NCBI GenBank assembly: GCA_044892505.1
Contig: CM097882.1
Location: 12,462,001 to 12,526,000 of the forward strand
DNA length: 64,000 nt
DNA from: Schmidtea nova
Taxonomy: Eukaryota
Direction of reading: 5' to 3'
Part shown: positions 15,597 through 33,174 of the stretch, in pieces
Numbering within the stretch: the first letter of the stretch is position 1
Layout of the letters: every line of letters begins with the position of its first letter
Notes under the pieces: model-generated
The model's input: the letters and a program-made list of their open reading frames with translations, nothing else
Databases searched by the model: none
What the model was told of the DNA's origin: nothing
Position numbers and translations under genes: made by a program

Positions 15597-16610
15597 TCAT
15601 TCCTTGTCGTTTCTCGTTAGCTTCGGTTCTTCTTGTCTTTCTTTTTCATTATCCTTTGTTCTTTTGTTGTCGTTGTCTTTGTTGTTTTTTTCATTGTTAC
15701 TTTTGTCGTCGAAATCTCTGTAACCACCCCCTGGTCCTTTCGAAATGTCGTCCTCGACATTAATTTCTTCAATCAGTCTTTCATACGCCTGAACAGCGAG
15801 TGTGCTAGACTCGAATTCTCGTATCTCCATATCCTTGGATGGTTCTATGTCTTCTAGTCTACTTTGCTTGATCGTTTCTTTGGCCTTTGCCCACTCATTC
15901 ACATATTTTCGGAATAAGTCTTTCCATCTTCCCATTTGTTCCTGTTCCTTTGGGTTGTTCGTGAATTTCAAATCTCTTCTCTTTAGGAATTCTTCTACTA
16001 TCTCTGGCTTTCTGTGTCTTAGTAACGCGCTTTTGATACACCAATTCTGATTCTGTTCCATATGGTCATTAATCTTGAACACTGGTTCCTTGGTGATCGG
16101 AATCACCCATGTTAGTAATGCTCTCGTTTTCTCTATGTCGTGTATCATTACAGTTAGACTGAAGTTCTTTACGTTATTCGCCAGATATTCGATATCCTCT
16201 TGTTTATTGATGGACTTTATGAACTTGATCATCTCAAAGTTGTTCCACTGTATTGCGATATCTATGATGGAATTATTCTTTCCATTTTTCCCTTCGATTT
16301 TCGCTCCTGCTTCGTATAATTCATTTAGCACTTTGCAGTTCGTCTTCTTCCTTGCTGCGATTATCATGATTGTATCTCCATTATCGTCAACCGTATTCAT
16401 GTCTGCTTCGCACTTGACCATCGCTTTCGTTATTTCTAGCACTTTGTTTTCTTTCTTTCGACGTAATACCCAGTGTATCGGTATTCTCTCATCCTTTGAT
16501 AGTAGGAATGCTACTGGCATTTGATTTTTGATCGTTTCTATGTCGTTCTCGTTATAATCTCCTTGTGCGCATTTGTGCACTTTCTCTGTAATTGCTCCTA
16601 ATATCTCCAA
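15597..16610 (-). CDS. Ankyrin-repeat protein/domain 2
   Basis: DERIPIHWVL, ADMNTVDDNGDTIMIIAARK, GAKIEGKNGKNNSIIDIAIQWNNFEMIKFI. In frame with the upstream ANK ORF across one TGA (16638-16640). Confidence 0.85.
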   Translation of the reverse strand: MEILGAITEKVHKCAQGDYNENDIETIKNQMPVAFLLSKDERIPIHWVLRRKKENKVLEITKAMVKCEADMNTVDDNGDTIMIIAARKKTNCKVLNELYEAGAKIEGKNGKNNSIIDIAIQWNNFEMIKFIKSINKQEDIEYLANNVKNFSLTVMIHDIEKTRALLTWVIPITKEPVFKINDHMEQNQNWCIKSALLRHRKPEIVEEFLKRRDLKFTNNPKEQEQMGRWKDLFRKYVNEWAKAKETIKQSRLEDIEPSKDMEIREFESSTLAVQAYERLIEEINVEDDISKGPGGGYRDFDDKSNNEKNNKDNDNKRTKDNEKERQEEPKLTRNDKE

Positions 16611-16637
16611 CGAATTTTTGTTCTCCTTGAATTCCGA

Positions 16638-17870
16638 TCATTTTTCCTGTGCTTTTGCTACGATTGCGTCTAATCTCTCTTGATAATCAGCTTTTGCATT
16701 GGACAACACTGCTTTGCTTCTTATTCGTGTTTGCATCTGTTTCATCCGTTGGTCTTGATACACTGCTTGTCTGAAGAATTGTCCATATTTCAGTGCTTCT
16801 ATCAGATCTTTATATCGCTTGCTTATTTCTTTTTGCTGCTTTTGGATGTCATAGAAATGTTCGAAGCTCATGTCCGGATTCCATTGCTTATCACACCATT
16901 TCTTGATTAATTCGAATAATTCTTTCTTTCTGTCTTCCAACTTGTATTCTCTTGGGTTTTCGCTAACCCGTAACGTATCTCTCGCTATTAACACTGCAAG
17001 TGTTTTTGGATCGTATGTTACTTCTAATAGATGTTTCAGTAACGCATTTTCTCCTCTTGTGAACACTTCATTACAATCTACGACCCACGAATCTCCTTCT
17101 GGTCGTTTCCACTTTAGCAATATTTTCCAGGTTTTACTGTTCTTTACCTCGATTGCTTGTTTCATGATCGATCCTCTAGTTAGTTCATCGATTTCCCACG
17201 TGGCATTCTCCGTAATATACTTTAGTATTCGGTGATTTGCTCTATCAATTGCATGATTCAAGAATGTTCGTCCTTCTTTTTCTTTTGTCATCCAATTCGA
17301 TCTGGTGTTTCCGAATAGCTTGATTATTTCATCATCTCTTCCATGAATTGTCATCATCATGAGTGGAGTAATTCCTTCCCAATTCACTTTGTCAATTTCT
17401 CCTCCACCTTCGAGTATCATCTCCACAATCTCTTTTACTTTTTCGTTTCCACTGTGCTTGATTGCATTGTGCAACGCTGTGTTACCGTCTTTATCCTGTA
17501 GATTCAATGTTTGAGGGATTTCTTCCAGTAACGTTCTTATAATTGGATGTGCTGTTCTATCCTTCGCATACTCCATTACATTCTTTCGAACTTCTGTTAG
17601 TATATTGAAATCGTGCCACCATTTCCATTCTGGTATAATTTCTCTGGTCCTCTTTGCCAGTTCTTTGATATCCGTTGCTTTTCTCCGGTTGTCTTCTAGA
17701 CTTATTTGCGGCTTTTGTTGTACTCGTAACATACTGATTCTCGCCGTCTGTGATCTTGTCATTACCCGTTTCTCTGGTGATAGAGTTGCTGTCTTTGGTA
17801 CTTTTCTGCATCGACATGCATTCACGTATATTGGTCTTACCAATGGATTGTTCACCAATCGTACTCGCAC
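16638..17870 (-). CDS. Integrase GPY/F tail continuing into ankyrin-repeat domain 1
   Basis: NLQDKDGNTALHNAI, GGEIDKVNWEGITPLMM, KEGRTFLNHAI. In frame with integrase across one TAG (17928-17930), with KGPYEI between. Confidence 0.85.
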   Translation of the reverse strand: MRVRLVNNPLVRPIYVNACRCRKVPKTATLSPEKRVMTRSQTARISMLRVQQKPQISLEDNRRKATDIKELAKRTREIIPEWKWWHDFNILTEVRKNVMEYAKDRTAHPIIRTLLEEIPQTLNLQDKDGNTALHNAIKHSGNEKVKEIVEMILEGGGEIDKVNWEGITPLMMMTIHGRDDEIIKLFGNTRSNWMTKEKEGRTFLNHAIDRANHRILKYITENATWEIDELTRGSIMKQAIEVKNSKTWKILLKWKRPEGDSWVVDCNEVFTRGENALLKHLLEVTYDPKTLAVLIARDTLRVSENPREYKLEDRKKELFELIKKWCDKQWNPDMSFEHFYDIQKQQKEISKRYKDLIEALKYGQFFRQAVYQDQRMKQMQTRIRSKAVLSNAKADYQERLDAIVAKAQEK

Positions 17871-17927
17871 ATTATTTTCATTTACTGTTGTTATTTCGTA
17901 TGGCCCTTTGCCTGGTCGTTGGAGTTT

Positions 17928-19067
17928 CTAGACCGTACCGGGTATTATCTCTGGTGTCTCGATTATCACCCAATTTCCAACTTTTAAATCATGTGCTTTC
18001 ACGTTCTTTTTCTGATCATGTAGATCCTTGTAACTCTCTTGATAGAACTTGATGTTTAGTTCCGCCGTTTTCCAGATTTCCTGCATTCTTTCTTTGAACT
18101 TTGTAACGTAATCGTCAACCTCCATGTACTGTGATATTGGTGGTTGGTATTCTAAATCTATCGGTAGGTTGCAATCTCTTCCGTACATCAGTTGGAATGG
18201 ACTTAGCTTTGTTGCCGCATGTATTGACATTCTATAGGCCATTAAACACAAGTTTATATATTCATCCCAATCAGTCTGATGTTTACTGACGTAATTTGAC
18301 AACATGCGTATCAATGTCCCATTGAACCTTTCTGTTTGACCGTTCGTTTGTGGATGGTATGGGGATGTTCGTAATTTCGCAATTCGGAAGTAATTCGTAA
18401 CTTCGTCTAATATTTCACTCATGAAATTTGTTCCTTGATCCGTTAGGATTTTCTTGGGTGTTCCGTATCTGCAGCATATCTCTTCCACCAATATTCTCGC
18501 GACTGTTTTCGCCTTTTGATCCGGTATTGCGAATGCTTCTGGGAACTTTGTTAGATAGTCCGTGACTACTAATATATACTGATTCCCTTTTAAACTTTCC
18601 GGCAATGGCCCAACTACGTCCATTGCTATCGTCGCCATCGGTTCTGCAGGTATTGGCATAGGTTTTAGTGGTGTTTTCCACTTCGTTCCGACGTTCTTTC
18701 TTGTTGCGCAGGTTAAGCAGGTTTTTATCCATTCCTTCACATCATCTTCCATGGTTGGCCAAAAATACTTTTGTCTCAGTCTTCCGATTGTCTTTTTCGC
18801 TGACATATGTCCGCCTAATTTTCCGTCGTGATATTGTGTCATAATTTCCTTTCGTCTGTTCGCAGGTAAGCACATCAATCTTCGTTCCCCATCTTGTATC
18901 AATAACCATCCTTTTTCCATCACGTATCGGTGTTGATATTTTTGCATATGATCGCGTAACGCTTGGTTCTTACCGAATATTTCCATTTCCCTTTCTTTCA
19001 AATACTTGCTGATCAATCCCAACTCCTCGTCTTCGAGTTGATCTTTCCTTAGTTCGCTGAAATCCAA
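17928..19067 (-). CDS. pol: Retroviral-type integrase of the giant element
   Basis: HDGKLGGH...CLTC zinc finger; IAMDVVGP, ILTDQGTNF and TNGQTERFN form the DDE triad. Confidence 0.97.
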   Translation of the reverse strand: MDFSELRKDQLEDEELGLISKYLKEREMEIFGKNQALRDHMQKYQHRYVMEKGWLLIQDGERRLMCLPANRRKEIMTQYHDGKLGGHMSAKKTIGRLRQKYFWPTMEDDVKEWIKTCLTCATRKNVGTKWKTPLKPMPIPAEPMATIAMDVVGPLPESLKGNQYILVVTDYLTKFPEAFAIPDQKAKTVARILVEEICCRYGTPKKILTDQGTNFMSEILDEVTNYFRIAKLRTSPYHPQTNGQTERFNGTLIRMLSNYVSKHQTDWDEYINLCLMAYRMSIHAATKLSPFQLMYGRDCNLPIDLEYQPPISQYMEVDDYVTKFKERMQEIWKTAELNIKFYQESYKDLHDQKKNVKAHDLKVGNWVIIETPEIIPGTV

Positions 19068-19134
19068 GTCCTCCGCTATTAATACACATATTTTTTGGAG
19101 CGTTCAGGTTCATCAATTCTGGAAATGTAAATCT

Positions 19135-19692
19135 TGACATGCAATCTGCGTTTGCATTTGCTTTTCCTGCTTTAACCTTTATGAATGGCGAGTATTCCTG
19201 TAACTGCATTGCCCAACGCATCAATCTACTTGATGATTCTTTATGTTGGCCTAACCATACCAATGGTTGATGATCCGTCGTGATATATATTTCATGACCC
19301 CACAATAGGTATTTGAAATGTTTGAGTGCCAATATTATCGCATAGGCTTCTCTTTCGGTGACTGAGTAATTCTTTTCATGCTTCCTGAATGTTCGACTGT
19401 AATATCCAATTACCCTCTCTTTACCTTCTTCATCGAATTGGCCTAGCACTGCTCCTGCTGCATATCCATTTGCATCTGTTGCCAACAAAAATGGCTTCTT
19501 AAAATCTGGATGGACTAATATTGGTGCTGTAATCAGTTTATCTCGTAATGTCTCGAATGCTGCTTGTTATTCTTCTCCCCATACAAACGACACATCTTGT
19601 CTTACTAGTTCTTGCATTGGCTTCGATATTCCTGCATAGTCCTTGATAAACTTTCGATAATATCCACACAATCCCAAAAATTCTTGTATTCC
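19135..19692 (-). pseudogene. pol: RT thumb/connection and Ty3/gypsy RNase H
   Basis: QEFLGLCGYYRKFI...WGEE*QAAFETL...LATDANGYAAGAVL...NYSVTEREAYAI...TDHQPL...NADCMSR. TAA at 19567-19569; frameshift to IN near 19110. Confidence 0.92.
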
Positions 19693-20519
19693 ATACGTTC
19701 GAGAGATTTGTATCTCTTCATCTAACAGATACTCCATATAATCTGATTGTTCGCTCAGAGTTTCGATTTGTCTTTCCATTTCTTCCACTTTTCTCTTCAG
19801 GGCTTCTACTTCTGTTGGTTCGGTTTCTACTTCTATGGTTTCTTTCTCTGCTTTCAGGGTTATTATTTGTTCTTTCAGCTCCTCGTTTTCTTTCGTCAAA
19901 TTCGTTATGTTTTCCTCATAAGCTCGGTTTGATTCCCCATGTCTTTCCTTCACTGCTTTCAACTCTATTTTCTTTTGGGTCAACACCCCTTGATAACCAT
20001 TTACATCTCTTTCCAGACTTTCTTTTTCCCTGATCAACTTTTGTCTTTCCGCTTCCTCTTTCTGTCTGATACCTCGCATTTCTCCATTTATCATCTGTAT
20101 TTGCCATTGCGTTTTCTTTAGTTCCTTTGCCTGTTCTCGAATAAATCGCTGCCGTTTTCGACTCCATTCTTTGTTTGTCTGTTCTTGTCGTTTTCTCTGT
20201 TCCAATTCCTCTTTCAATTCGTCTATCTCTTGATACAGTTTCCAATCTTCGCTGTATGCTGTCTTTCTGATTAACTCTTTGGCTTCTTTATATACTCGTT
20301 TCGACTCCATCTTCCAATGTCTCGCTTGATCTTTGATCGCTAGTATTTTATCTCCATCTTTTCCTCTTGTTTCTCCCTCTCTTCCCTTCGCGTTTTCATC
20401 AAGTTTTTGTAATGTTCCGCTTGTTTTCTCATCAACTGATAGGTCTCTTCTATCTTCTGTCGACTTCGTGAATTCGTTCCTTTTAGCTTCTCTATTTGTG
20501 TTGTCAGTTGTACTATCTC
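19693..20519 (-). repeat. 827-bp near-identical copy of 10476-11302 replacing part of RT
   Basis: Same length and sequence as 10476-11302 with only two differences noticed. It sits between YIDD and GIQEFLGL, where ~65 RT codons are missing. Confidence 0.93.
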
Positions 20520-20529
20520 AATGTACTAG

Positions 20530-21815
20530 ATCAATAAATCGTCGATATACACCATTCATTGCTTTATGCCATGTGTTACGAAATTCATGCATCTCTGGAA
20601 TGATGCTGGCGCGTTTGTTAACCCAAACGGCATTTTCTTGAATTGGTACAGATCTCTTCCGATTGTGAATGCTGTCTTTTCTTTATCCTCGTCTTTCATT
20701 TTGATCTGCCAATATCCGCTTTTTAAATCTAGTGACGTGAAATAGGCTGCTCCTTGTAGCGTCAACAACATTTCGTTTATATCTGGCAGTGGGTACGTAT
20801 CTCTTTTCGTAACTGCATTCAATCGTCTGTAATCGATACAGAATCTCTGAGATCCATCCTTCTTTTTCACCATCACCACTGGGAATTGCCAGGGTGAGCA
20901 ACTAGGTTCGATGACCTTTGCGTCTAACATCTTTTGTACCTCTTCTTCTGCCAATGCTTTTTGAGCTTCTGCCAGTTTGTATGGTCGTAATGCGATTGGC
21001 GTTTCGTCCGTCAACGGTATCGTGTGTAATGTTACATCGCATGTTCCTAAATCCAAATCTGATGCTGCGAATATGTCTTTATATTCCATCAATAGTTTCT
21101 GTAGCTGTTCTTTTTGTCGTTCGTCTAACAACACACTGTTGATTTTCCATGGAAATTCGTCACTGCTTTTCTCATTCTTGTCTGGTATCTCGATTTCGGA
21201 CATGGGTGTCAATTTACCCAATCTTTCATTTTTATATATTATTTTGTCCTCTTCGTCGACATTTACCAGATTAATTGGTATCTCACCTTCTTGGTTTATT
21301 GTGACTAATTCTCTTGCCATTGGAAATTCTTTTTTTGCTTCGAACTTCTTACTGGGTTCGAATATCATATCTCCCTTTATTGTCGAATCGATCTTGACAT
21401 AGCACATCATTTCATGTCTCGCTGGTACTACTATTTGTTCCGCACTTGCCACTTTAACTTTCATTCTGCAGATTTTCCCTGTTCTGTCTTTTAGTTTCAT
21501 TGCTCCTAGATCGATTACGATTTCCTTGAACAGGTCTGGCATCAGGTCAGTTCCAATAATACATGGTACACTCATCGATGGTATTACAGCGATGTACGTG
21601 TTAATTTCTGCCTTTCGTTGTTTAATTTTTACAAACCATCTTCCGGCTATTTCTACTGTCTCTTGACTGCACGCGATTACATGAACATTCGTCTTCTCGA
21701 TTTCTCCTTGGTTTTTCTCTGGTATATAGTTGATATCGATTGCCGAAATATTCGCGCCTGTATCGATCGTAGCTTCGATTTCTCTTCCGTTTATTTCTAT
21801 GGTTGTTGTTAAAAT
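20530..21815 (-). CDS. pol: Aspartic protease and reverse transcriptase (N-terminal two-thirds) of the giant element
   Basis: IEATIDTGANISAI; RPYK, SPWQFPVVMVKKKDGSQRFCIDYRRLN, DLKSGYWQI, KMPFGLTNAPASFQR. YIDD at 20538-20549 just after an in-frame TGA. Confidence 0.97.
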
Positions 21816-22329
21816 CGGTCCCATATTTGTGGACATAACTGCTATCGTGTGCGTGTCTTCCAACGAGTCTGCGCTTCTAACTCGTTTTACTTTGCATCCT
21901 TCGGGAATTATCGGGTATATACTTGTCATCGGCATCATCTGCATCATATTCGGCTTTGTTTTGTATATCGGTTCGTTGTACATTGACTGAGGTGGAGCGC
22001 TGTATCTCCAATTCTCAACTGCACTCTTTTCTGTATACTGTGGAATCTGGTTTACATTTGCTTGTCCTCCTTGATCGTCATCGTCATCGTCATCATTGCT
22101 TGAATCATCTTGTGTTCGATATCCCCTCACTCTTTCCCATAATCCTTTCCTTTCTTTCTTTAGTTGTCGTCTTGCTTGCTCATCTTGCATTATCTTTTTG
22201 AATTTCCTTCCGACATCTTCATTTGTTCCTTTCATTTTTGCAAGTATTTTCAACAATCTCTTTATTCGATGTATGTCTTTTGAGTTTCCGTGCAACACCA
22301 TTGTTTTCGCAAGAAATGGTAAAAACTCT

Positions 22330-24195
22330 ACCACCATCTTCCAATTCACTTTCTTTTCTCTCTTGTAGATATCAAAACACGCTAACATTTGCGTTATTAT
22401 CACTCTGACGATTTTTATTATCAATATAACACCCAGTATTCCAGCCATCATTTGTCCGAATATCAGGAATCTTCCCCACATTGCTTTCATCATATTTTCC
22501 GTGGCTTTCTTGAAATGTGCCGGTGATAACAGTAGTTCATAATTCGTTCCTCCCGTTATCGTTACGATATTTGACAGTAATGCTTCTCTTCTTGTCGGGA
22601 ATAATATATTCTGTCTTGCTGCTTCCAGATCTTTTGGACTATAGATTCCGTTGTTTGAGACATCTACGTCGCTGAATTGTCTATCCTTCGATAACTGCAT
22701 TAGCTCGAATTCTCTTGGTGCTATTACTTCGGCTCTTGCTAGGAACATTACCCATTTGCCATCTGGCTTCTGATAAAGCGGTCCGGACGCATTACTACAG
22801 TTGAATGGATTTGGTTCAAACCCTGGTGGATTGATGATTCTCGTCACCGGTTGAACGTATCGTACTTTTCCTTTATAATCGATTTCTAATTCGTTTGTGC
22901 ATGTTCCAGGTTTCAACTGCGTTGTTGCTGCTAGCGGCGCGTGTGTCTTTTCACAAATGTATACATACATTGCCTCTCCAACCTCTCTTCCGAAATGTCC
23001 TTCCCTCAGTGGTAATAACGGCATCGCGCTATCTGGATTCGTAATCGCTACGGCCTACTTTGTCTTTAATATCTCTCGGTTCAGTATACAATCGTTATTT
23101 ATCAGATCATAGTACACTTTTTGCAATGAGGCTTGTCCTCTATGGAATAAGAAATCCATTTTATTATTCACATACAAGTGTAGCTTGATATCCATTGTGT
23201 CGATCTTGGGTTTCGCATTCGGCACTTCTTGCTTTGACACGTATATTCCTGGGTAGTTCGTTTCGTATACCGTTGTACTACACTTAAGGGTTGCTTTCCC
23301 TTTTATGAATCTCAATCCCACATCTTGATTTGTGGTTATCAACACTGTTGGTGTGGTTCTCATTTCTATCCGTTTTTCTCTATGATCTCGCTTCAATTGT
23401 CTTTTATTCTCTAAAGCCTCCTTGAGATGCTTTGCTCTAGCTTTGTCATCATCATCTTCTTCCTGGAACGTTTTTCCTTGAATTTCGTCGAACTTTGCTT
23501 CTTGTAGCAGTTGTAATTGACATTCGTTCACTTTCGGTTTATACACCAATGTTGACATTCCCGTTTGACACATGCTCCTGTCAATTTTACACATGGATAA
23601 CGTTTTCATTTCTCCTGTTGTCGGTTCGAAGAATGCTTCGTAGCTTTTCAGTTCGACTATATACGTATCCATCACCACTAAGTTGGTTGCAGGTACTCCG
23701 AATATTGGGTAGGTTTCTCCTTGACAATATCCTTCTCCTCCCGTAATCCGTCCTGCTACATAATACGTCTGCTGTAGCATCATTCCTGGCTTTCCTTTTA
23801 TCTTGATTTTATCTCTTGTTGTTACTTCTCCGTGTTTAAATAATGCTTCGCAGTCTTCTCCTTGCAACACGATTGGTTCTCTTTCCGTTCCTGGCATGAC
23901 AATTGCTGAATAATGTCCTCTCCCACAATAGAATGCAAATCTCGTCTTCTGCACCTTGCATTCATTCACCATTGTCTTTATTAGTTCTGCTTCTTGATAC
24001 ACGTGGTACCATTGTTCCTTTTTAATCTCTTTTAACTCTACTGGAGTTGCATCTTTGCATTGCTCCGTACCTCTCAATGAATACTTTTCTCCTAACTTCA
24101 TTTGATCACAATCAAATACTTCAAATGTTGTTACACCTTCTGTGCTTAACAACCATACTAACATCATCATGATTATCGAGTTAAGATTCAACGTC
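22330..24195 (-). CDS. env: Envelope glycoprotein, chuvirus-like/gB-type, embedded in the pol frame upstream of protease (one in-frame TAG at 23055-23057)
   Basis: Hydrophobic signal SIIMMMLVWLLSTEG; FEVFDC..YSL..EQC, ECKVQKTRFAFYCG, GEAMYVYIC, VQPVTRII, GIYSPKDL..ILFP and WGRFLIFGQMMAGILGV follow the pattern I recall for chuvirus/Pao-associated glycoproteins. Furin-type REKR; C-terminal TM. Confidence 0.82.
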
Positions 24196-25901
24196 GATCT
24201 TCCGTTTCCTTGCATCGTTTGTCTATTCTCCATTTCTCTCAATACTCCTTCCAGTTTCTTTCTCATCACGTTTGAACCTTCTTTTGTCTGGTTCTCTTTT
24301 ATGAACTTTTCCCATCCTCCTTTTCTGAGGATATAGGGTTCAATTTCTTTCTCGATAATCATCGCCGTATTTTTAATATGTCTTCCCATCGGACTTGACT
24401 TCGGACTCCCTCGGCTTAGCGTTAGCAAATTGTATATTGTATACGAGATTGCCACTAGATATTTGCTGTCTGTTTCTGCTCCATTAAGTAGCTTTTTTAT
24501 TAACATCGTGGTTCCTTGCCAATCTAGATGATTCGATTTTGTTTTTGCCTTTATCAATTCTGGCATGATCGGTGCTATTGCATTGTGTAGCATCTTTGCC
24601 TTTGTACTAGGTTCGTTTATCCGCCACAAATTCTTTAATTCCGGGTCGATTATCGCTAACACATCCATTATCGTTTTGGTGAGCCATTCTTCTCCTTGGC
24701 AGGCTTGATTCTCCTCTTTTCCTCTGATTTCTGCGATTTTGTCAAGTTTCTTCAAGCAAATCTCCCATTGCTCTTGTCTCCTTTCTTCCCTTGTCTTTGA
24801 GATTGCTGTTGTTGGGTCTATCTTTGGTCTTCCTCTTGGTCGTTTTTCCATTCCAGTTCCGGTTTCTACGAATCTCGCTGCTCTTCCGGTTTCTTCTGTA
24901 ACATCTCTTCCTTCGTTTGCTCGTTGTTCTAACCATCTTTCCATTTCTTGGGTAAACTGTGGTTGTTCTTGCTCGTCTTCCGAATCGTTTACCATTTCTA
25001 TGACTACCTCCTGTTCCACTCCTTGATCGTCGATTTCTGCTGGTGACGTTATTGGCATCTCTATTATTCTGTCAAAAATATTCGCAGTTGGTTTTTGAGT
25101 CAACTTTGTTAATTCTTCTATTGCTTCGTCACTGTCTGTTAGTATCTCGTCGACGTCATATGCTTCTGGCGGTGTTCTCTCTCTCGTTTTTATTGGTGTT
25201 GTCCTTGCTTGTCCCGAACTTGTTCCTGGGGTCATTGTTGACTTTATCGGACTTGGTGTACTCATGCTTCCTTTCGGTTTCTTTTCCTCTTTCAGCTTCA
25301 GTGGTTGACCCACTATTTGTGCCACTGTTAGCGTATTCACTAAATCCAATTGTACTGGTGTCAGCCAGATTTCCAAATTATTATCCAACGATCGTCCTTG
25401 ATGTTGCAGGTGGAATGGTAGTTCGTACATCAGTTTCTCTTTAACGCTTTTCACTTTTTCTGTAAGCATCACCCAAAACTCTTCTTTTCTCTGATTCGGA
25501 TACATTATCCTCAAATGTATTTTCTGTGGCGTTTCTTCCGCAAACTCTTTGTTTCTCCACTTTTTTATTACATGGTCTAGTTGCTCTGGACACCACTCAT
25601 TAATTCTCTTGTATTCTGCTATCACTTTAGCTGCTTTTCTCAAGTTCGTTATGTCTTCTCCATTTGCGATTATAAATTCTGCTAAGCCTTTTATTGTTTG
25701 TCTTTTTCCCCGAGTATTCCTTCTCAACAACTCGGTTAATTCGTTCGTTTTCTGTTTTTCTAATTCTGCCCATATTACTGCAGTTTCTGGTCCGTCTAAG
25801 TCCGTTGGTAATAACCTCTTTGTTACTATACATATCCGTTTCGTATTCGGTTCATATCTGTCTTCTTCTTCTGGATCTTCTTCATACACGCCTCTTTTCA
25901 C
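23055..25901 (-). CDS. Polyprotein segment: UBL3 (~25325-25525), acidic linker, AT-hook (KRPRGRPK, ~24822-24846), Bcl-2-like domain, env N-half
   Basis: 948-aa open frame, in frame with flanking ORFs across single TAG codons. Confidence 0.85.
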   Translation of the reverse strand: MKRGVYEEDPEEEDRYEPNTKRICIVTKRLLPTDLDGPETAVIWAELEKQKTNELTELLRRNTRGKRQTIKGLAEFIIANGEDITNLRKAAKVIAEYKRINEWCPEQLDHVIKKWRNKEFAEETPQKIHLRIMYPNQRKEEFWVMLTEKVKSVKEKLMYELPFHLQHQGRSLDNNLEIWLTPVQLDLVNTLTVAQIVGQPLKLKEEKKPKGSMSTPSPIKSTMTPGTSSGQARTTPIKTRERTPPEAYDVDEILTDSDEAIEELTKLTQKPTANIFDRIIEMPITSPAEIDDQGVEQEVVIEMVNDSEDEQEQPQFTQEMERWLEQRANEGRDVTEETGRAARFVETGTGMEKRPRGRPKIDPTTAISKTREERRQEQWEICLKKLDKIAEIRGKEENQACQGEEWLTKTIMDVLAIIDPELKNLWRINEPSTKAKMLHNAIAPIMPELIKAKTKSNHLDWQGTTMLIKKLLNGAETDSKYLVAISYTIYNLLTLSRGSPKSSPMGRHIKNTAMIIEKEIEPYILRKGGWEKFIKENQTKEGSNVMRKKLEGVLREMENRQTMQGNGRSTLNLNSIIMMMLVWLLSTEGVTTFEVFDCDQMKLGEKYSLRGTEQCKDATPVELKEIKKEQWYHVYQEAELIKTMVNECKVQKTRFAFYCGRGHYSAIVMPGTEREPIVLQGEDCEALFKHGEVTTRDKIKIKGKPGMMLQQTYYVAGRITGGEGYCQGETYPIFGVPATNLVVMDTYIVELKSYEAFFEPTTGEMKTLSMCKIDRSMCQTGMSTLVYKPKVNECQLQLLQEAKFDEIQGKTFQEEDDDDKARAKHLKEALENKRQLKRDHREKRIEMRTTPTVLITTNQDVGLRFIKGKATLKCSTTVYETNYPGIYVSKQEVPNAKPKIDTMDIKLHLYVNNKMDFLFHRGQASLQKVYYDLINNDCILNREILKTK
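24295..24695 (-). CDS. Bcl-2-like domain within the polyprotein
   Basis: BH2-like EPYILRKGGWEKFIK (cf. WIxxNGGWxxF), preceded by a degenerate BH1-like WQGTTMLIKKLLNGAETDSKYLVAI; all-helical pattern; canonical NWGR absent. Confidence 0.68.
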
Positions 25902-25904
25902 TTT

Positions 25905-27866
25905 CTAACATCTCTCTTTATCGTCCCATCGTTTCTCCACTGGCGTCAATCGTCGTTTATTAAGATCCAATTCTCCAAATATTGTCTCCCATTCAGACTT
26001 TATCCGCCAGTTCCGATAGATTTCTACTATCTGTCTCAACTTGCGCATAACGTCTTCTTGTCGTGCCTTTTTCCTTTCCTCATCTCTTGGTGTTGCTCTT
26101 GGCACGTCATCCATTCTGATGACATGTATTGTCTGGTAATTATCCCATATGCCGATTTTATACGCTCGTCTCTCATCTCGTTCATTCAGTAGATGTTCTT
26201 TGTATTTTATAGCGATGTCGTCCTCGAATTCATCTTCCCGTTCTCGTTGCAATATCGTCTCATTGATGACATCTACTATTTCTCCCACTTTACTATCTGG
26301 TATTACTTCAATTTGTCTTGTCTCTTCGTTCGGCAATCTCACGGTAATCTTCAGGTCTGATACCTCTCCTCGTTTGAACATTTCTTTTCCCATCTTTGCA
26401 ATTAGCTTGTCCGTTTTGAAATTTGAATGTCTCGTTTGACTTGTATTTCGTATGTTCTCGATACACTGTTTCAAATTCTCATACTCGCTTTTTGACAATT
26501 CCTTTCGATATTTCTTGATTTGTTGGATGATCTGTTCTATCATCGTATTCAAATTCTCTGCCAAGATTCTTTCTTTTGCCTCTACCAACTGAGGTTTTAT
26601 TCTCATCTCATAACACGTATTCGCTTCTTTGACGATTCCTTGTAAGTTCTCTTCCTTCTTGGTGTTGCATATTGATGACGTTGTTATTTCTCCTGGCCAG
26701 ATGCCTGTGTCTATCATATGCGTTCCTTTTCTCACCAATCCGTTTTCCGAATATATGAATTTGTCTTTGTACGAGCTTCCCAATCTGTCCTCAACCCATC
26801 GGTAAATTCCATCCGTCATTGGGTTCTTTATCCAGATTCTTGGTGAACACTCGTTTATCCATATCTGTATTATGTATTCGTTGAGTGGTTCTTTTAACAA
26901 CTTCTCAATGTACTCTTGTATTACTCTCACTTCTCTTTCTTGTAACCACTCTTTATACTTCGTTTGCCATACTGCTCGTATAAACTTTCGGTATCGTTTC
27001 TTGTCGATAAACTCCTCGTTATGGATTACTTCTAAAGCGTTATTCATCAGCTTCTGAATTTCGTCTTCCTTTACTGATACTGTTTCTATTGTCTCGACTA
27101 CTTCCATCTTTTTATCCTCGTTTTCCGGTTCCTTTAGTATGTCTCCTGCCAGACTGCTAACTTTGCTGTCGTCTTCTTCATCTGACAATTCTTGTCTTGG
27201 GTGTCTCAGCATCCCAATATGCGCGGTTGGTCTTACTTTGTTTTTGCTAACCTCCTGCGTTAGTTCATTCTCGTTTCCCGTTATTTCAGCTTTTCCCATT
27301 CTCTTCTCTAACTCATCTATTTCTTCCAACCGTCTTCGTCTTATTTTTCCTTTAAATATCCGACTGATCCGAGTTTGATGTTTCACTGGTGGTGGGATTT
27401 TCTCCGGTTCCACCTCTCTGATGATCATCACGTTTATTTTCGTCTCCGTTACTCCCATATCTTCCCAAGTATCAGTCATCTTCAACTTTACTTCTGGCAA
27501 ATCCTCTGTTTGTAGGAATGCTTCTCTGGGCAGTTTCGTCACTCCCGGAATCATCTCATTTACTTTATTGAACAATCTTCCCACTTCTTCTTTTACATCG
27601 AATTTGAATCGAAACACGTGATCATTCGGCATGATCACCAACATTCCTCTTTGCTTGATTCTCATTTCTTCTTCTTGATTCGCTTCTTTTTCTGTTTCTT
27701 TTTCTGTTTCTGTTTCTTTTCTCTCTTCTTCCTCTTTTTGATTCTGTTCTGCGGTTTCTACTTCCTGATTCACTTCTTCTTGTTTCCGCTCTTCGTTTCC
27801 TTTTTCTTTAACTTCGAATTCGTCTGACTCATCTTGCTGCTTCTCTTCCATCATTGCTCGCATCAT
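25905..27866 (-). CDS. Polyprotein N-terminal segment with two ubiquitin-like domains (~27415-27645 and ~26113-26358)
   Basis: LKITVRLPNEETRQIEVIPDSKVGEIVDVI...IKYKEHLL...IGIWDNYQTIHVI follows the ubiquitin beta-grasp pattern; MLVIMPNDHVFRFKFDVKEEVGRLFNKV...INVMII is a weaker match. The ATG overlaps the gag TGA (ATGA). Confidence 0.75.
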   Translation of the reverse strand: MMRAMMEEKQQDESDEFEVKEKGNEERKQEEVNQEVETAEQNQKEEEERKETETEKETEKEANQEEEMRIKQRGMLVIMPNDHVFRFKFDVKEEVGRLFNKVNEMIPGVTKLPREAFLQTEDLPEVKLKMTDTWEDMGVTETKINVMIIREVEPEKIPPPVKHQTRISRIFKGKIRRRRLEEIDELEKRMGKAEITGNENELTQEVSKNKVRPTAHIGMLRHPRQELSDEEDDSKVSSLAGDILKEPENEDKKMEVVETIETVSVKEDEIQKLMNNALEVIHNEEFIDKKRYRKFIRAVWQTKYKEWLQEREVRVIQEYIEKLLKEPLNEYIIQIWINECSPRIWIKNPMTDGIYRWVEDRLGSSYKDKFIYSENGLVRKGTHMIDTGIWPGEITTSSICNTKKEENLQGIVKEANTCYEMRIKPQLVEAKERILAENLNTMIEQIIQQIKKYRKELSKSEYENLKQCIENIRNTSQTRHSNFKTDKLIAKMGKEMFKRGEVSDLKITVRLPNEETRQIEVIPDSKVGEIVDVINETILQREREDEFEDDIAIKYKEHLLNERDERRAYKIGIWDNYQTIHVIRMDDVPRATPRDEERKKARQEDVMRKLRQIVEIYRNWRIKSEWETIFGELDLNKRRLTPVEKRWDDKERC

Positions 27867-29548
27867 GTTGATCCTTGGATTTCCTTTTTTAACTGTTGTA
27901 ATCGTTGTTGTCTGACTTGTTCTTCCTCTCGTCGTATTCTAGCCCATTCCTGGTTATGTTTCTGTTGACTCTCTCTATTTTCTCTTTCGGCCTCAGCTTC
28001 TATTAACTGGATCATGTTTAGCTTTGGTTGAGCAGCTTGCTGGCTTCCCTTTGCCATGCTTTCGATTTTCTCATGTAATCTGGATACCTCCTGTCTCAAC
28101 TTGGCTTCTTTCATACTGGCTTCATTTGCACTGCTATTTGGGTTGTTCCGTTGTTGACCCTGATTCCCATAGCTTGGTCGATTTCCGTAATTCTGTCTAT
28201 TTCCACTGTTTGACCAACTTCTCTGTTGATTACACTCTCTGGACATATGTCCGGTTTTTCCACATGTGTAACACGTTTTCCCGTAACATCGATTTTCTGA
28301 GTGACCTTTTTGTCCACACAGTTTACAGGTTACGTTCTGAAAACAATCTTGTTGCCAATGTCCGTTTTTTCCACACGTCTGAGATTGCCTATTCTGCCTG
28401 TCATTGTAACTATTTCCTCCATTCGTGTTTACTGTGATATATCCGTTGTTTTTCCTCGCTGGCGGTTCTTTGAACAATCTCTGCGAATGGGGAATACTTT
28501 GATTCATGTTTCTTTTTCCTTTTTCTTCATCTTCTGTCGTTTTTCCCATTACCGCCGTAATTCTCATGTCATTCATTGCCATATGCAATTCGAATAGGTT
28601 GGCTGCTTCCAACGCTTCATCTACTGTTTTACATCCTTTGCATCCCACTTGTGCTCTGATGTCAGGTCTCCTGAGACCTCGTACGAATAACGCTGTCATC
28701 AATTCCTCATCCACTGGGCTTCCTCTGTTGAACGCCAGTTTCACCAACTTCCTTAATTCACTTGCGTACACCGCATTTGACTCGTTTCTCCTCTGTTTTC
28801 TTGCTGAAAACTCATCGAATACTTCATTCAGCACTTTGTTTATCCCAAACGTCTGTTGGAAGAATTCCTTGATTGCTTCCCACGTTCTGGGTGGACTACT
28901 TCCCGATCTCTTTTCAATATACAGATCCAATGCGCTATCTTTCAAATATAGCGGGATTCGATTTGCCAACGTTTCCGGACTCCATCCGCATATATCCACA
29001 AATATGCCAAATTCCTTTAGAAACGTGTCCAATCTACTGGCGTCTCCATTGAATGGTTCGCCCTTGAATTTTTCTCTCAGATCCTCTCTGTGGTCACTCA
29101 TCCCGATTCCGCTGTCTTGGAATACTGTACTAGTTTTCTTTGCTTCTATTTCACCACTTGTTTCTGGATTCAACTCTTCTTCTTCACTACTCTCTGTTTC
29201 GTTATCTCTTGATTTGCTTCTTGTTCTGTTTTCACTGACTAGTTCACTGTCTATCGTTTCTACTTCGTTTTGTACTTCTAGATCCTCTGGGGTTTCTTCT
29301 TGATTCTCTTTATTACTCGAATTATCGCTGATCTCTGCTGGTTTATTCTTTTGTTGCGCTGTTTTATTCCCTGGTCTTGTCTTTTTCGCTGTTTTTCTTT
29401 CCTCTTCTGTTAGGATCGATTCTGTACTGACCTTTTGTTGTGCTACTTTAGCTGCTGCTTTTGCCTTTTTTGCTGCTTTTCTTTCTGCTTCTGTTAGGAT
29501 TGGTATTATACCTGTCCTTGTTTCGCGTTCCGCAATTTTGTCTATTAC
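27863..29548 (-). CDS. gag: Gag of the giant element (capsid-like domain plus three zinc knuckles, the first degenerate)
   Basis: PFNGD..LDTFLKEF..W...YLKDSALDLY; CKLCGQKGHSENRC, CYTCGKTGHMSREC and a degenerate SQTCGKNGHWQQDC. The frame is open from 29548 (upstream TGA at 29549-29551 may be a lesion); the track's start at 29173 is a TTG. Confidence 0.92.
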   Translation of the reverse strand, partial: VIDKIAERETRTGIIPILTEAERKAAKKAKAAAKVAQQKVSTESILTEEERKTAKKTRPGNKTAQQKNKPAEISDNSSNKENQEETPEDLEVQNEVETIDSELVSENRTRSKSRDNETESSEEEELNPETSGEIEAKKTSTVFQDSGIGMSDHREDLREKFKGEPFNGDASRLDTFLKEFGIFVDICGWSPETLANRIPLYLKDSALDLYIEKRSGSSPPRTWEAIKEFFQQTFGINKVLNEVFDEFSARKQRRNESNAVYASELRKLVKLAFNRGSPVDEELMTALFVRGLRRPDIRAQVGCKGCKTVDEALEAANLFELHMAMNDMRITAVMGKTTEDEEKGKRNMNQSIPHSQRLFKEPPARKNNGYITVNTNGGNSYNDRQNRQSQTCGKNGHWQQDCFQNVTCKLCGQKGHSENRCYGKTCYTCGKTGHMSRECNQQRSWSNSGNRQNYGNRPSYGNQGQQRNNPNSSANEASMKEAKLRQEVSRLHEKIESMAKGSQQAAQPKLNMIQLIEAEAERENRESQQKHNQEWARIRREEEQVRQQRLQQLKKEIQGST

Positions 29549-30060
29549 TCAACTTCTTATATTCTCAACTGATTTTCTACTTCGCTTTTGCTTTGCTTCT
29601 TCTTTGATTTGTTTCCTTTGATTGTTCTGACTGCTAGATTGCCTTGAATCGCTTGATTGATTTGTTTCCTTAAAACAAATAATCACTTAGACGATACGTC
29701 CCCGTTATCGTGTTTCTCGTCCCTCTCACGGGTGTAGTCATAATTCATGAAGATCCCCATTTTTCCCATTTCCCTTGATTTTAAGTCTATTTAAACTATC
29801 TATGCAGTCGTATCAATTATCTATACTTCATCAAATACACCAATTACTTTTCCCCAGTTCCCCAATTACTTTGTCGCTCAGCGCTTTTATTATCCCCTTT
29901 ACTTTTCTCAGGCTTCTCTGGCTCTGAGTTCGAATTTCCCCTTATCTATTGACTACTCTGTTTCTCGACTACTCGCTTTATTTTCTATTCACACTACGTT
30001 TACTACTTCGTTTCAATTCTCATCTCTACTCACTTTTAATTCCACTGACATCTCTCGTTG

Positions 30061-30525
30061 GCCTGCTGGGCTTTCCAGTCAGCGCCTTTCATCTCATCTG
30101 TTATCTCGACTTTATTTCTCTCAACATCACTCATTATCTCATTAGCCTGCTGGGTTTTCCAGTCAGCGCTTTTAATCTCACCTTTTACTGTTATCTCGTT
30201 ATTCTCGACCACGATTATCGTTTCATTAGCCTGCTGGGTTTTCCAGTCAGCGCTCTTATTATCCTCCATTTATCTCTTTACTGTCGACTTTTAACTGCTC
30301 TTTACTCCGATGATCATCATTTTTTGGCCTGCTGGGTCTTCCAGTCAGCGTCCTCAATTTCACTACTTTATTATTACTCACTTTTATTCTCTCGATCTTT
30401 CTTGATCGTTATCATTGACCTGCTGTGTTTTCCAGCTAACGTCTTTACCACTTTACCTGTCTTAACAAACCGGTTTCCTTTTATTCCCATCGAATCTCAT
30501 GGTCTGCTGGGTTTTTCAGTCAGCA
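30061..30525 (-). repeat. Six spaced copies of a ~24-nt hairpin-forming core (GCCTGCTGGGTTTTCCAGTCAGCG on +) at 83-98 bp period, in the 5' leader
   Basis: Cores start at 30061, 30145, 30229, 30327, ~30417 (degenerate) and 30502; spacers are much more divergent than cores. Confidence 0.88.
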
Positions 30526-30869
30526 CCTTTCACTTACTCACTTTACTTTATTATTCTTCACTGTATGCATACTTTGACGTCGTTAGGCCACATAATCAGC
30601 TTACTCGCATTTATCGATACCCAGGTGCGCACCTTTAACTCTTTCGTTATTAATTCGGTTTCTTTCAATCATTATTCCTCATTATTCGTTATTCATTTTC
30701 ACTATTCATCATTTATCCTCATTATCACTTATTCGTCTCTACCCTCCTTTATTCCTCTCTATTATTGTCGTTTATTTCTACTATCCGGATAGTTTTATAC
30801 TTTGTTTAGTCCTCATCTGCCTCACTTCGTCGTCTTTCTCGTGGGCTTTTACTCAATATCTTATTTCGA

Positions 30870-31500
30870 ACGAGAACTATGCTCACAGTTGAGAACTATG
30901 CTCACTAACGAGAACTATGCTCACTGACGCGGACTGCGCTTACTACGAGAGCTAGGCTCACTGACGAGAACTATGCTCACTGGCGAGAACTATGCTCACT
31001 GGCGAGAACTATGCTCACTGGCAAAACATGGTTGTTACGAGGGTTTTGTTTACTGATGGAAACTCTGTTTGCTCCGGGAACTATGTTCCCTGATTAGAAC
31101 TATGCTCACTGATGAAGGATGTTTTTATTACAGGAATTATGTTTCCTGATGAGAACTAAGCTCACTACGATGATTATGTTTATTGATGAGAACTACGCTC
31201 ACTGATGAGGACTATGTTCGCTGTTAGGGCTTACGTTTATTGATGAGAACTCTGCTCACTACGATGTTATGTTTAATGCCGAGACCTATGCTCACTATGA
31301 TGTTAGGTTTCATGGCGAGACCTATGCTAACTATGATATTAGGTTTTATGACGAGACCTATGCTCACTATGATGTTAGGTTTTATGACGGGACCTATGCT
31401 CACTATGATGTTATGTCTAATGTCGAGACCTACGCTCACTATGATGTTATGTTTTATGACGAGACCTATGCTCACTATGAGACCTATGCTCACGAACGAG
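30870..31500. repeat. Tandem array built on GAGAACTATGCTCACT, evolving from ~18-21-bp to 33-bp units
   Basis: Directly visible; produces the repetitive ORFs 31224-31766. Confidence 0.9.
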
Positions 31501-32189
31501 AACTCGAAATATCATCTCTCAGTGGTTGCATGTATTTCTTCGGAGATGTTCATCTCTCAGTGGTCACTTATGCTTCTTCGGAGAATCTATTATCGCGTTT
31601 CGTTAAGTTCTATCTTTCAAGAACTATGGGCAAATCCTTTCTCTTTAGGACCCTTTTATTATCTCCTTTCTTTCAAGGATTTCATTTAGCCTCGAGTTTT
31701 CCATTTACTCGGCTCATCTACTACACCCCTTTATTCTATTATCGATTCGTCAACCTCTCTACGTGATTTTACTTTATGCGAGCTGATTACGTGCCTTTCA
31801 TCATATACCCCATTTATCCACTTTTATTATTCATTTCCTCACTCTCTTTCTCTACTGATCAAATTATCATCCTATTTTTATAGTTTTTCTGCGCGCGCCT
31901 AAACCTCATTGAGTTGTCCCTACCTTTCGACTCAACCAAAATATATAAAAAGATCGCATTGGTCCACTGATGCACGATGTGGTGATCAGTCACATCAAAA
32001 GAGCTTTCCAATATCCGCGATTGGTTCCTTTCTACATATCTCGGGTAAGTTTATCAGTTGGTTCCCCCCAATCGGTGCTTACCGGACTACTAGTGAGTAG
32101 CTCATAATTACTTAGGTCATTTTTACCAAGTCGTTATTAAACCCTCATAATTTCAACAACAGCTGTACTTGTTCAAAACTTTATTTCTA

Positions 32190-32648: not shown

Positions 32649-33174
32649 CCCCTGAATGAATTCTCATTAATTTTGTCGATTTTTATTTATTATTTATTAT
32701 TCCTATTCTATGGTAGCCCTACTGTTCGCTTTTTGTTGTTCTGTTTTGCGTTGTTATTTGCGTATCCCCCCGTGTTCTTGAATGTCGCCCCGACATGATC
32801 ATTGTTAGTTGTTCACACACATATCATTTTCATGCATACCTTTCAAAATACTTTTATATTGCTTCATTCCTACTTTTCATTTCTTTTCCTACTGTTATTC
32901 CACATACTATTCATCATGCTTCATTCATACTCATATTTTCACATTCATACTTTCATTCTCATGTATACTTTTATCACGTTCATCAATCTCATTATTTTAC
33001 ACTCATACCTTTATTTATTATTTTTCAACCCGATTCATTCTTGCTTCAGGACCCTCAAACCCTCTGTTATTCTTTACTTTACTTTTCCTCTCTAAATTCA
33101 ATTTCATCCCGGTTCAGGCGCTCTAAAACTGTCTGCAGATATCGAATTCACTTTTTCCCACAAAGATCGATTTA

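What the first reader, a model, noticed from the sequence alone, without database searches (positions are those of the whole stretch)
20556..27866. Envelope glycoprotein sits inside the pol reading frame, upstream of protease
Seen: ORFs 25905-27866, 23055-25901 and 20556-23024 share one frame, separated only by single TAG codons (TAG-AAA-GTG; TAG plus 10 sense codons before the next ATG). The second TAG falls mid-ectodomain, so it must be a lesion or be read through. The order is UBLs-Bcl2-signal-Env-TM-PR-RT. Known: env normally lies 3' of IN as a separate spliced ORF in retroviruses and errantiviruses. Inferred: env is made as part of the Pol polyprotein, tying envelope to enzyme stoichiometry.
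Basis: partly seen in the sequence, partly recalled or inferred. Interest (0 to 1): 0.88.

Follow-up and report, generated by a model that had tools for sequence, protein, structure and literature searches.

The report
Burro-like giant retroelement, env inside pol
The region is the middle of a decayed 29.8-kb Burro-like giant LTR retroelement whose viral-type envelope glycoprotein gene lies in the same reading frame as protease and reverse transcriptase; this layout is real but was published for planarian Burro elements in 2019.

Summary
On the minus strand, three long ORFs share one frame and are separated only by single stop codons. They carry a Monjiviricetes-type fusion glycoprotein (Pfam PF24664, 1.4e-30 and 3e-27), then a membrane anchor, a tail, protease and the start of RT.

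The setting is a 29.8-kb Ty3/gypsy-type element (window 6474-36274) with 3.08-kb LTRs that are 98.7% identical. It also carries RING, ankyrin and TRAF-like cargo.

Eight predicted proteins, seven divergent lineages, carry glycoprotein then protease in one product; seven of them are from metagenome contigs. So env-in-pol is a family trait, and the stop inside the ectodomain is a lesion.

This copy is dead: five internal stops in the long frame, two frame changes in RT-RNase H-IN, one internal duplication, and part of RT missing. LTR divergence predicts about 2.8 new stops per 7.3 kb.

[quoted passage not shown] It is therefore not new.

My tools could not confirm the UBL and Bcl-2 domains. Translation as a membrane-threaded polyprotein is inferred, not shown.

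The parts
6474..36274 (-). Whole giant LTR retroelement (29.8 kb). It has about 0.39 G+C and an A-rich coding strand, in a host background of 0.22-0.27 G+C.
   Evidence: Self-BLAST; LTR ends TG..CA; composition.
33198..36274 (-). 5' LTR (3,078 bp; 98.7% identical to the 3' LTR), followed by a TGG-starting primer-binding-like stretch.
32190..32648 (-). Accessory ORF with a C3HC4 RING finger.
   Evidence: Pfam PF13920, 3.9e-09.
29348..31584 (.). Leader region full of tandem repeats (periods 19, 36, 84 and 93 nt). It has no long minus-strand ORF.
27863..29173 (-). gag, with CCHC zinc knuckles. It lies in the frame one base off from the polyprotein frame and overlaps it by about 24 codons. The overlap contains an in-phase A_AAA_AAG heptamer.
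   Evidence: Pfam zf-CCHC 9.7e-11; sequence; frames.
17928..27866 (-). Polyprotein gene, broken: N-terminal accessory region, env, protease, RT, RNase H, integrase. Breaks: two in-frame stops upstream of protease, two frame changes, one inserted internal duplication, and about 35-70 residues of RT missing.
24180..27866 (-). N-terminal accessory region of the polyprotein (about 1,230 codons). It contains K/E-rich stretches, three mutually similar stretches of about 90 residues with a beta-beta-alpha-beta-beta pattern, and a block of about nine helices just before the signal. The UBL and Bcl-2 identities are unconfirmed.
24123..24179 (-). Internal signal-like hydrophobic segment at the start of the glycoprotein domain.
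   Evidence: Kyte-Doolittle scan; same position in five relatives.
22452..24122 (-). Env ectodomain (about 557 codons), Monjiviricetes-type fusion glycoprotein, broken by one in-frame stop.
   Evidence: PF24664, 1.4e-30 and 3e-27; colinear with relatives at equal spacing; relatives' ectodomains are 537-570 residues.
22395..22451 (-). Transmembrane anchor of Env.
   Evidence: Hydrophobicity 2.53.
21807..22394 (-). Cytoplasmic tail/linker (about 196 codons), open in frame into protease.
21534..21806 (-). Retropepsin protease domain.
   Evidence: PF00077, 7.5e-09.
14691..17927 (-). Region after integrase in the same frame as env-PR-RT and IN. It has two ankyrin-repeat blocks and an unassigned stretch, and is interrupted by three in-frame stops.
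   Evidence: Pfam Ank_2, 6e-12 and 8.8e-12; frame arithmetic; stop count.
11646..13022 (-). TRAF-like accessory ORF (RING, TRAF zinc finger, MATH).
   Evidence: Pfam PF21355, 4.5e-24; 25-27% identity to vertebrate TRAF2.
9764..11093 (-). Two 3' accessory ORFs: one coiled-coil-like, one with hydrophobic stretches. A 0.83-kb stretch here has a 99.8% identical second copy inside pol.
6474..9551 (-). 3' LTR, preceded by a purine-rich tract. It contains ORFs of 224 and 187 codons with no family match.

Best explanation
The finding is the central part of one decayed copy of a Burro-like giant Ty3/gypsy LTR retroelement, that is, an endogenous retrovirus-like element.

In this family the envelope gene is not a separate 3' ORF. 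A mononegavirus/chuvirus-type fusion glycoprotein is embedded in the long polyprotein frame, after an N-terminal accessory region and directly before protease-RT-RNase H-integrase.

Likely mechanism (inferred):
- Ribosomes translate gag and continue into the long frame. In this copy that would need a -1 shift in the gag/pol overlap. In published Burro-1, Gag is in frame.
- The internal hydrophobic signal inserts the chain into the ER membrane, so the roughly 557-residue ectodomain is made in the lumen.
- The transmembrane anchor returns the chain to the cytosol, where the tail, protease and replication enzymes are made.
- Signal peptidase on the lumenal side and the element's own protease on the cytosolic side would then free the glycoprotein.
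- Env would therefore be made in a fixed ratio to Pol.

For: Shown:
- Element bounds, LTRs and age.
- Domain order RING, gag(CCHC), long accessory region, PF24664 glycoprotein, TM, PR, RT, RNase H, IN, ankyrin, TRAF.
- One frame from the accessory region to RT.
- Eight predicted proteins (P0012, P0014, P0022, P0052, P0088, P0089/P0162, P0168), representing seven lineages, carry glycoprotein then protease in one product. Seven come from ENA metagenome contigs of 6-31 kb. P0014 is on record only from NCBI, as the GenBank MAG protein HBK71150.1, on a 9-kb contig. The glycoprotein match is full length in the longest ones (model about 6-650 of 653), and five of them run on through RT, RNase H and IN.
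- Their glycoprotein regions are only 23-62% identical to each other, apart from P0089 and P0162, which fall in the same 90%-identity cluster (99.8% identical here). An open linker of 92-417 codons in every lineage is therefore not chance.
- The internal signal plus TM pattern and the ectodomain length are conserved.
- Relatives read on through the position of the ectodomain stop with the same spacing.
- LTR divergence predicts about 2.8 new stops in this 7.3 kb against two seen.
- The rest of pol is also broken.

From the literature:
- Burro/GYPSM1 of Schmidtea mediterranea exceeds 30 kb. Its polyprotein holds Gag, MATH_TRAF, SUMO-like, BCL2-like, env, PR, RT and IN, plus RING and ankyrin. 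[quoted passage not shown]
- The planarian genome is more than 70% A/T (PMC11410931), which matches the window background.
Against: - No Burro sequence was available, so family membership rests on architecture and base composition only.
- BIR and dUTPase-like motifs reported for Burro were not found.
- TRAF lies 3' of integrase here, not upstream of env.
- gag is out of frame here.
- The UBL and Bcl-2 domains are unconfirmed: AlphaFold2 single-sequence models had pLDDT 38-39 and Foldseek E-values were 0.15 or worse.
- The metagenome proteins are gene calls. I did not inspect their DNA. Only P0014 is also a GenBank protein record.
- Co-translational membrane threading, the cleavage sites and the frameshift are inferred. 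No stable RNA structure follows the heptamer (z = 0.5), and in-phase heptamers are fairly common in this A-rich gene (4 in 437 gag codons).
- The first of the two stops could not be compared with relatives, because the accessory region has no detectable homologues.
Confidence: 0.78

Rival explanations
1. The in-frame stops are programmed read-through signals, as at the gag-pol boundary of gammaretroviruses. They would dose the downstream parts of the polyprotein.
For: Both stops upstream of protease are the same codon type. Read-through is a known retroviral device (general knowledge).
Against: - One stop lies inside a folded ectodomain, where dosing makes no sense.
- All seven related lineages read on through that position with the same spacing.
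- Decay alone predicts about 2.8 stops.
- The same frame has three more stops of mixed types after integrase, and pol is otherwise broken.
- Published Burro-1 has one continuous polyprotein ORF of 4,873 residues.
Confidence: 0.04
2. Env is expressed on its own, from a spliced or internally initiated message. The shared frame with pol would then be tolerated but not used, so Env is not tied to Pol stoichiometry.
For: - Retroviruses and errantiviruses normally use a spliced env message (general knowledge).
- In relatives P0012 and P0168 the long ORF begins only about 125-140 residues before the glycoprotein, so translation could start near env.
- No expression data were available.
Against: An independently expressed env would be expected to end in a stop. 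Instead, all seven divergent lineages and this copy keep the tail open into protease over 92-417 codons.
Confidence: 0.15
3. The arrangement is an accident of this locus: a glycoprotein-bearing viral fragment nested in a gypsy element, or an assembly chimera.
For: The copy does contain a 99.8% identical internal duplication inside pol. That is more similar than its LTRs are to each other, so local rearrangement or mis-assembly does occur here.
Against: The same order in one ORF recurs in seven independent lineages and in the published Burro map. Composition and strand skew are uniform across the element. No repeats flank the env segment.
Confidence: 0.03

Closest known systems
Burro-1 to -4 / GYPSM1 giant Ty3/gypsy LTR retrotransposons of the planarian Schmidtea mediterranea and relatives (Jurka 2007; Grohme et al. 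2018; Arkhipova & Yushenova 2019, PMC6431247)
   Same: - About 30 kb with long LTRs, and tandem repeats.
- Gag with CCHC knuckles.
- RING, MATH/TRAF and ankyrin cargo.
- env similar to mononegavirus fusion glycoproteins, lying in frame between gag and protease.
- PR-RT-RNase H-IN order.
- A very A/T-rich host genome.
   Different: - In this copy gag is one frame off.
- The TRAF-like gene lies 3' of integrase.
- No BIR or dUTPase-like motif was detected.
- The SUMO-like and BCL2-like motifs were not confirmed.
- Nucleotide identity could not be measured, because no reference sequence was at hand.
gag-env-pol 'non-canonical' errantivirus-like elements of Nematoda, Bryozoa and Platyhelminthes (Sacco et al. 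2022, J Gen Virol 103:1739; Chary & Hayashi 2026, PMC13524379)
   Same: Ty3/gypsy pol with a class III-type envelope gene placed upstream of pol instead of after integrase.
   Different: - Those elements are of ordinary size; the survey kept LTR pairs 5-14 kb apart.
- They were handled as separate ENV and POL ORFs with gaps allowed, and have no large host-like cargo.
- The Sacco paper is not held in the library. My recollection that it describes one continuous gag-env-pro-pol ORF is unverified.
Chuvirus-type glycoprotein captured by mosquito BEL/Pao elements and by some gypsy elements (Dezordi et al. 2020, PMC7642597; cited in PMC13524379)
   Same: The same broad glycoprotein kind (Jingchuvirales/Mononegavirales type, said to be structurally gB-like), recruited by an LTR retroelement.
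   Different: There the glycoprotein is a separate ORF next to pol, in a different retroelement superfamily. Here it sits inside the polyprotein frame.
Membrane-threaded polyproteins of enveloped positive-strand RNA viruses such as flaviviruses (general knowledge; works-like comparison only)
   Same: One translation product with internal signal and anchor segments. Glycoprotein ectodomains sit in the ER lumen and enzymes in the cytosol, and the product is cut by host signal peptidase and a viral protease.
   Different: There is no homology. Here the enzymes are retroviral, and the topology is predicted only from two hydrophobic segments.

Membership tests
Burro/GYPSM1 giant planarian gypsy elements | Total length about 30 kb with LTRs; internal region up to 25 kb. 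| tested here: met
   29.8 kb in total, 23.6 kb internal, LTRs of 3,078 bp.
Burro/GYPSM1 giant planarian gypsy elements | env homologue in frame between gag and protease. | tested here: met
   PF24664 and RVP lie in one frame, and the envelope tail and protease share one ORF.
Burro/GYPSM1 giant planarian gypsy elements | Gag with CCHC knuckles as the N-terminus of the same ORF. | tested here: inconclusive
   The CCHC gag is present but lies one frame off with a short overlap. This could be a programmed shift, a lesion or an assembly error.
Burro/GYPSM1 giant planarian gypsy elements | RING, MATH_TRAF_C and ankyrin cargo domains. | tested here: met
   PF13920, PF21355/PF22486 and PF12796. The position of TRAF differs from the published Burro-1 map.
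Burro/GYPSM1 giant planarian gypsy elements | BIR domain. | tested here: not met
   No BIR hit in any minus-strand open stretch of 70 codons or more.
Burro/GYPSM1 giant planarian gypsy elements | Ubi2/SUMO-like and BCL2-like motifs just upstream of env. | tested here: inconclusive
   - Pfam at E<=10 gave none.
- PDB sequence and profile searches gave none.
- AlphaFold2 models had pLDDT 38-39, with beta-grasp-like and helical patterns only.
- Foldseek gave nothing below E = 0.15; SUMO-2 and Bcl-xL appear only among insignificant hits.
Burro/GYPSM1 giant planarian gypsy elements | dUTPase-like motif between protease and RT. | tested here: not met
   No Pfam hit at E<=10 in the spacer. The published call came from HHpred, which is more sensitive.
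Burro/GYPSM1 giant planarian gypsy elements | Sequence identity to the deposited references; host is a dugesiid planarian. | not testable with these tools
   - No reference sequence or host record was reachable.
- The window's own proteins are not in the protein collections.
- Only the base composition fits.
Ty3/gypsy (Metaviridae) LTR retroelement | LTRs ending TG..CA; PR-RT-RNase H-IN order; H2C2 plus rve integrase. | tested here: met
   The best RT relatives are Ty3/gypsy pols.
Monjiviricetes-type viral fusion glycoprotein (Pfam PF24664) | Profile score above the curated cut-off, with an N-terminal signal and a C-terminal anchor. | tested here: met
   106 and 95 bits for the two pieces against a cut-off of 27. 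The hydrophobic segments are in place.
Monjiviricetes-type viral fusion glycoprotein (Pfam PF24664) | Class III fusogen fold. | not tested
- PDB sequence searches with the two pieces found nothing.
- The literature calls the chuvirus-type protein structurally gB-like.
Programmed stop-codon read-through | The stop is conserved at the same site in relatives. | tested here: not met
   All related lineages read on through the site of the ectodomain stop. The other stop could not be compared.
Programmed -1 ribosomal frameshift at gag/pol | In-phase slippery heptamer followed by a stable RNA structure, conserved in relatives. | tested here: inconclusive
   The heptamer is present in the overlap, but the base rate is 4 per 437 codons. 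Downstream folding is no better than shuffles. Relatives' DNA was not examined.

The most novel reading that the evidence does not exclude
The single-ORF layout, with internal signal, glycoprotein ectodomain, anchor, protease, RT, RNase H and IN, is not a planarian oddity. It would be the hallmark of a wide and old clade of retrovirus-like elements, seen here in seven divergent metagenome lineages. These elements would thread their polyprotein through the ER membrane, flavivirus-style, and so fix the Env:Pol ratio by translation rather than by splicing. This mode of retroviral envelope expression has never been shown experimentally.
Probability: 0.35. Interest if true: 0.55.

Novelty: already known. 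Interest (0 to 1): 0.25.

Why it matters
For the scan, this locus is one decayed copy of a published kind of element, so it should not be flagged as a discovery.

More widely, Burro-like elements are a natural example of an envelope gene expressed from inside a retroviral polyprotein, next to cargo that looks like host apoptosis and ubiquitin-pathway genes. The metagenome relatives found here suggest the layout extends well beyond planarians. That bears on how retroelements acquired and kept envelope genes.

Tried and rejected
- Word-based protein search with the env-tail-PR-RT piece found only distant gypsy pols, because intact relatives are too long for its length filter. The full HMMER scan was needed.
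- Exact look-up of a window protein to identify the host genome found nothing on record.
- The TRAF-like ORF search gave only 25-27% identity to vertebrate TRAF2 and no clue to the host.
- For the UBL and Bcl-2 claim, Pfam at E<=10, PDB sequence searches, a three-repeat profile against PDB, two single-sequence AlphaFold2 models and two Foldseek searches were all negative or insignificant.
- PDB sequence searches with the two glycoprotein pieces found nothing.
- A tRNA scan for a primer match found no tRNA gene in the window.
- RNA folding downstream of the gag/pol heptamer was no better than shuffles.
- BIR and dUTPase searches were negative.
- The Grohme 2018 and Sacco 2022 papers are not held in the library.
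- I rejected a variant genetic code as the reason for the stops, because ORFs of up to 948 codons are free of all three stop codons.
Full report
**Observation.** Translating that frame as it stands shows two internal stops between its start and the end of the RT match. I do not repeat their places.

The frame is coding on both sides of the second stop. The Pfam model PF24664 ('Monjiviricetes_fusion', viral fusion glycoprotein) matches model positions 4-209 in the piece before it (1.4e-30). It matches positions 368-579 in the piece after it (3e-27). The unmatched model positions in between fit the residues in between.

In the last piece the glycoprotein is followed, with no stop, by a strongly hydrophobic anchor and a tail of about 196 residues. 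A retropepsin domain (PF00077, 7.5e-09) and the first two-thirds of an RT domain (PF00078, 8.3e-21) then follow. Only two hydrophobic 19-residue stretches occur in the roughly 2,400 codons. One is at the very start of the glycoprotein domain and one about 557 residues later.

**Context.** The finding lies inside a 29.8-kb LTR retroelement on the minus strand, at window 6474-36274.
- Its LTRs are 3,078 bp, 98.7% identical, and end TG..CA.
- The element has about 0.39 G+C and a strongly A-rich coding strand, in a background of 0.22-0.27 G+C.
- From 5' to 3' it carries: LTR; a RING-finger ORF; about 2 kb of tandem repeats; gag with CCHC knuckles; the long frame with accessory region, env, PR and RT; RNase H; integrase; two ankyrin-repeat blocks; unassigned ORFs; a TRAF-like ORF (RING, TRAF zinc finger, MATH); two small ORFs; LTR.
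- gag is one frame off from the long frame and overlaps it by about 24 codons. The overlap contains an in-phase A_AAA_AAG heptamer.

**Relatives.** A word-based search with the last piece found only distant gypsy pols, because of that tool's length limits. A full HMMER scan of 1.84 billion representatives, checked locally with the window's pieces kept apart and with Pfam, gave different results.
- P0012, P0014, P0022, P0052, P0088 and P0089 (plus its cluster mate P0162) each carry the glycoprotein and then protease in one predicted protein. The glycoprotein match is full length in the longest ones (model about 6-650 of 653).
- P0012, P0014, P0052, P0088 and P0162 run on through RT, RNase H and integrase. 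P0022 stops in RNase H and P0089 in protease.
- A last search with the N-terminal half of the glycoprotein added P0168, which carries glycoprotein plus protease.
- Seven of the eight come from ENA metagenome contigs of 6-31 kb. P0014 is on record only from NCBI, on a 9-kb contig, as the GenBank protein HBK71150.1 filed under a Flavobacteriaceae MAG.
- Their glycoprotein regions are 23-62% identical to one another, apart from P0089 and P0162, which fall in the same 90%-identity cluster. They therefore represent seven separate lineages.
- All five that have the full glycoprotein start show the same internal signal-like segment, an ectodomain of 537-570 residues and an anchor.
- In the seven relatives where both the anchor and protease were located, the linker into protease stays open for 92-417 codons. 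In non-coding sequence an open run of that length has a chance of roughly 0.01 or less per lineage.

Env inside the pol frame is a family trait.

**The stops.**
- The relatives read on through the position of the ectodomain stop with the same spacing as the window. That stop is a point lesion.
- The accessory region has no detectable homologue in the relatives, so the first stop could not be compared.
- From the LTR divergence I expect about 47 substitutions and 2.8 new stops in this 7.3 kb. Two are seen.
- The copy is broken elsewhere too. RT-RNase H-integrase lies in three pieces with two frame changes. A 0.83-kb internal duplication sits inside pol, and about 35-70 residues of RT have no trace anywhere in the element.
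- The integrase, ankyrin and following stretches share the env-pol frame but are separated by three more stops, of mixed types.
- Read-through signalling is therefore very unlikely.

**What is known.** Arkhipova and Yushenova (2019, PMC6431247) describe the Burro/GYPSM1 elements of the planarian Schmidtea mediterranea.
- They exceed 30 kb with LTRs and contain tandem repeats.
- Their 4,873-residue polyprotein starts with Gag (three CCHC knuckles).
[quoted passage not shown] PR, a dUTPase-like motif, RT, RNase H and IN follow.

The planarian genome is more than 70% A/T and rich in Burro elements longer than 30 kb (PMC11410931). Burro1 is transcribed and under PIWI control (PMC8532177). Chary and Hayashi (2026, PMC13524379) report the gag-env-pol order in nematodes, bryozoans and flatworms. 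They cite Sacco et al. 2022 for nematodes. That paper is not held, and my memory that it describes one continuous ORF is unverified.

The window element matches the Burro description in size, LTRs, repeats, gag, RING, ankyrin, TRAF and the in-frame env. It differs in four ways:
- gag is one frame off.
- TRAF lies after integrase.
- No BIR or dUTPase-like motif was found.
- The SUMO-like and BCL2-like motifs remain unconfirmed.

These differences could reflect a different subfamily or species, decay, or the lower sensitivity of my searches. No Burro reference sequence was reachable, so membership rests on architecture and composition.

**UBL and Bcl-2 claim.**
- Pfam down to E = 10 and PDB sequence searches found nothing.
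- Three stretches of about 90 residues align with each other at 18-24% identity. Their profile finds nothing in the PDB.
- Single-sequence AlphaFold2 models have mean pLDDT of 38-39. They show three beta-beta-alpha-beta-beta patterns and a block of about nine helices before the signal.
- Foldseek finds nothing below E = 0.15. SUMO-2 and Bcl-xL appear only among insignificant hits.
- The claim is consistent with the published Burro map but not shown here.

**Mechanism.** Shown: the colinear single frame, the two hydrophobic segments, and their conservation. Inferred: ribosomes pass from gag into the long frame, the internal signal puts the ectodomain into the ER lumen, and the anchor returns the chain to the cytosol for protease and the enzymes. 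Signal peptidase and the element's protease would then release Env, so Env would be made in a fixed ratio to Pol.

Whether the gag/pol frame change is a programmed shift is open. The heptamer is in phase, but such heptamers occur 4 times in 437 gag codons. No stable structure follows it, and Burro-1 has Gag in frame.

**Limits and rules.**
- Pieces separated by stops or frame changes were always searched apart.
- N runs (four, all outside the element) were left alone.
- I did not fetch the DNA of the metagenome relatives. See the referred steps.

- I have not repeated it and have deleted nothing.
- The output of my script lists the codon number of the heptamer in the gag/pol overlap. That would be near a break if the frame change is a lesion.
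- None of those letters went into a tool call, and no conclusion rests on them.

**Verdict.** This is a real feature, correctly read in outline, but already published for this kind of element. This copy is dead. Interest is low for the scan. There is modest added value in the seven divergent related lineages, six of them from ENA metagenomes, that share the layout.

Noticed in passing
window 9764-11302 and, for the second copy, inside the pol gene 17928-27866: A 0.83-kb stretch of the 3' accessory region has a 99.8% identical second copy inside pol. It is more alike than the two LTRs are to each other (98.7%). This points to a rearrangement after insertion, gene conversion or an assembly mis-join.
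   Followed up: partly
window 37844-46000, minus strand: A BEL/Pao retroelement: DUF1759 plus CCHC gag, Peptidase_A17, RT and integrase. At its 3' side is a 216-codon ORF with a weak match to the proteasome subunit PSD13 N-terminal repeats. This could be captured cargo or a host exon.
   Followed up: no
window 49971-55596, plus strand: An ordinary Ty3/gypsy element (RT, RNase H and integrase ORFs at 51346-55596), preceded by a 0.9-kb tandem array with an 11-bp period at 49971-50896.
   Followed up: no
window 57933-63423: A plus-strand run of ORFs with a Pox_A32-like packaging ATPase (58493-59122), an rve integrase (59757-60188) and a chromodomain (60224-60811). This looks Maverick/Polinton-like. 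A minus-strand ORF with a TATA-binding-protein domain lies at 57933-58403.
   Followed up: partly
protein P0014 (GenBank HBK71150.1): A 2,627-residue glycoprotein-PR-RT-RNase H-IN polyprotein is filed in GenBank as a hypothetical protein of a Flavobacteriaceae metagenome-assembled genome. It is almost certainly a mis-binned eukaryotic retroelement contig.
   Followed up: no
proteins P0012, P0089, P0162: Some relatives carry two retropepsin-like domains in tandem between the envelope anchor and RT. Several have further hydrophobic segments in the long extension after integrase.
   Followed up: no
window 6858-8305 and 34354-35028 (inside the LTRs): The 3-kb LTRs contain minus-strand ORFs of 224 and 187 codons with no family match.
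   Followed up: no
window 4781-5029 and 49270-49522: Two related palindromic repeats of about 220-250 bp (inverted arms 81-85% complementary) look like copies of a small foldback or MITE-like element.
   Followed up: no
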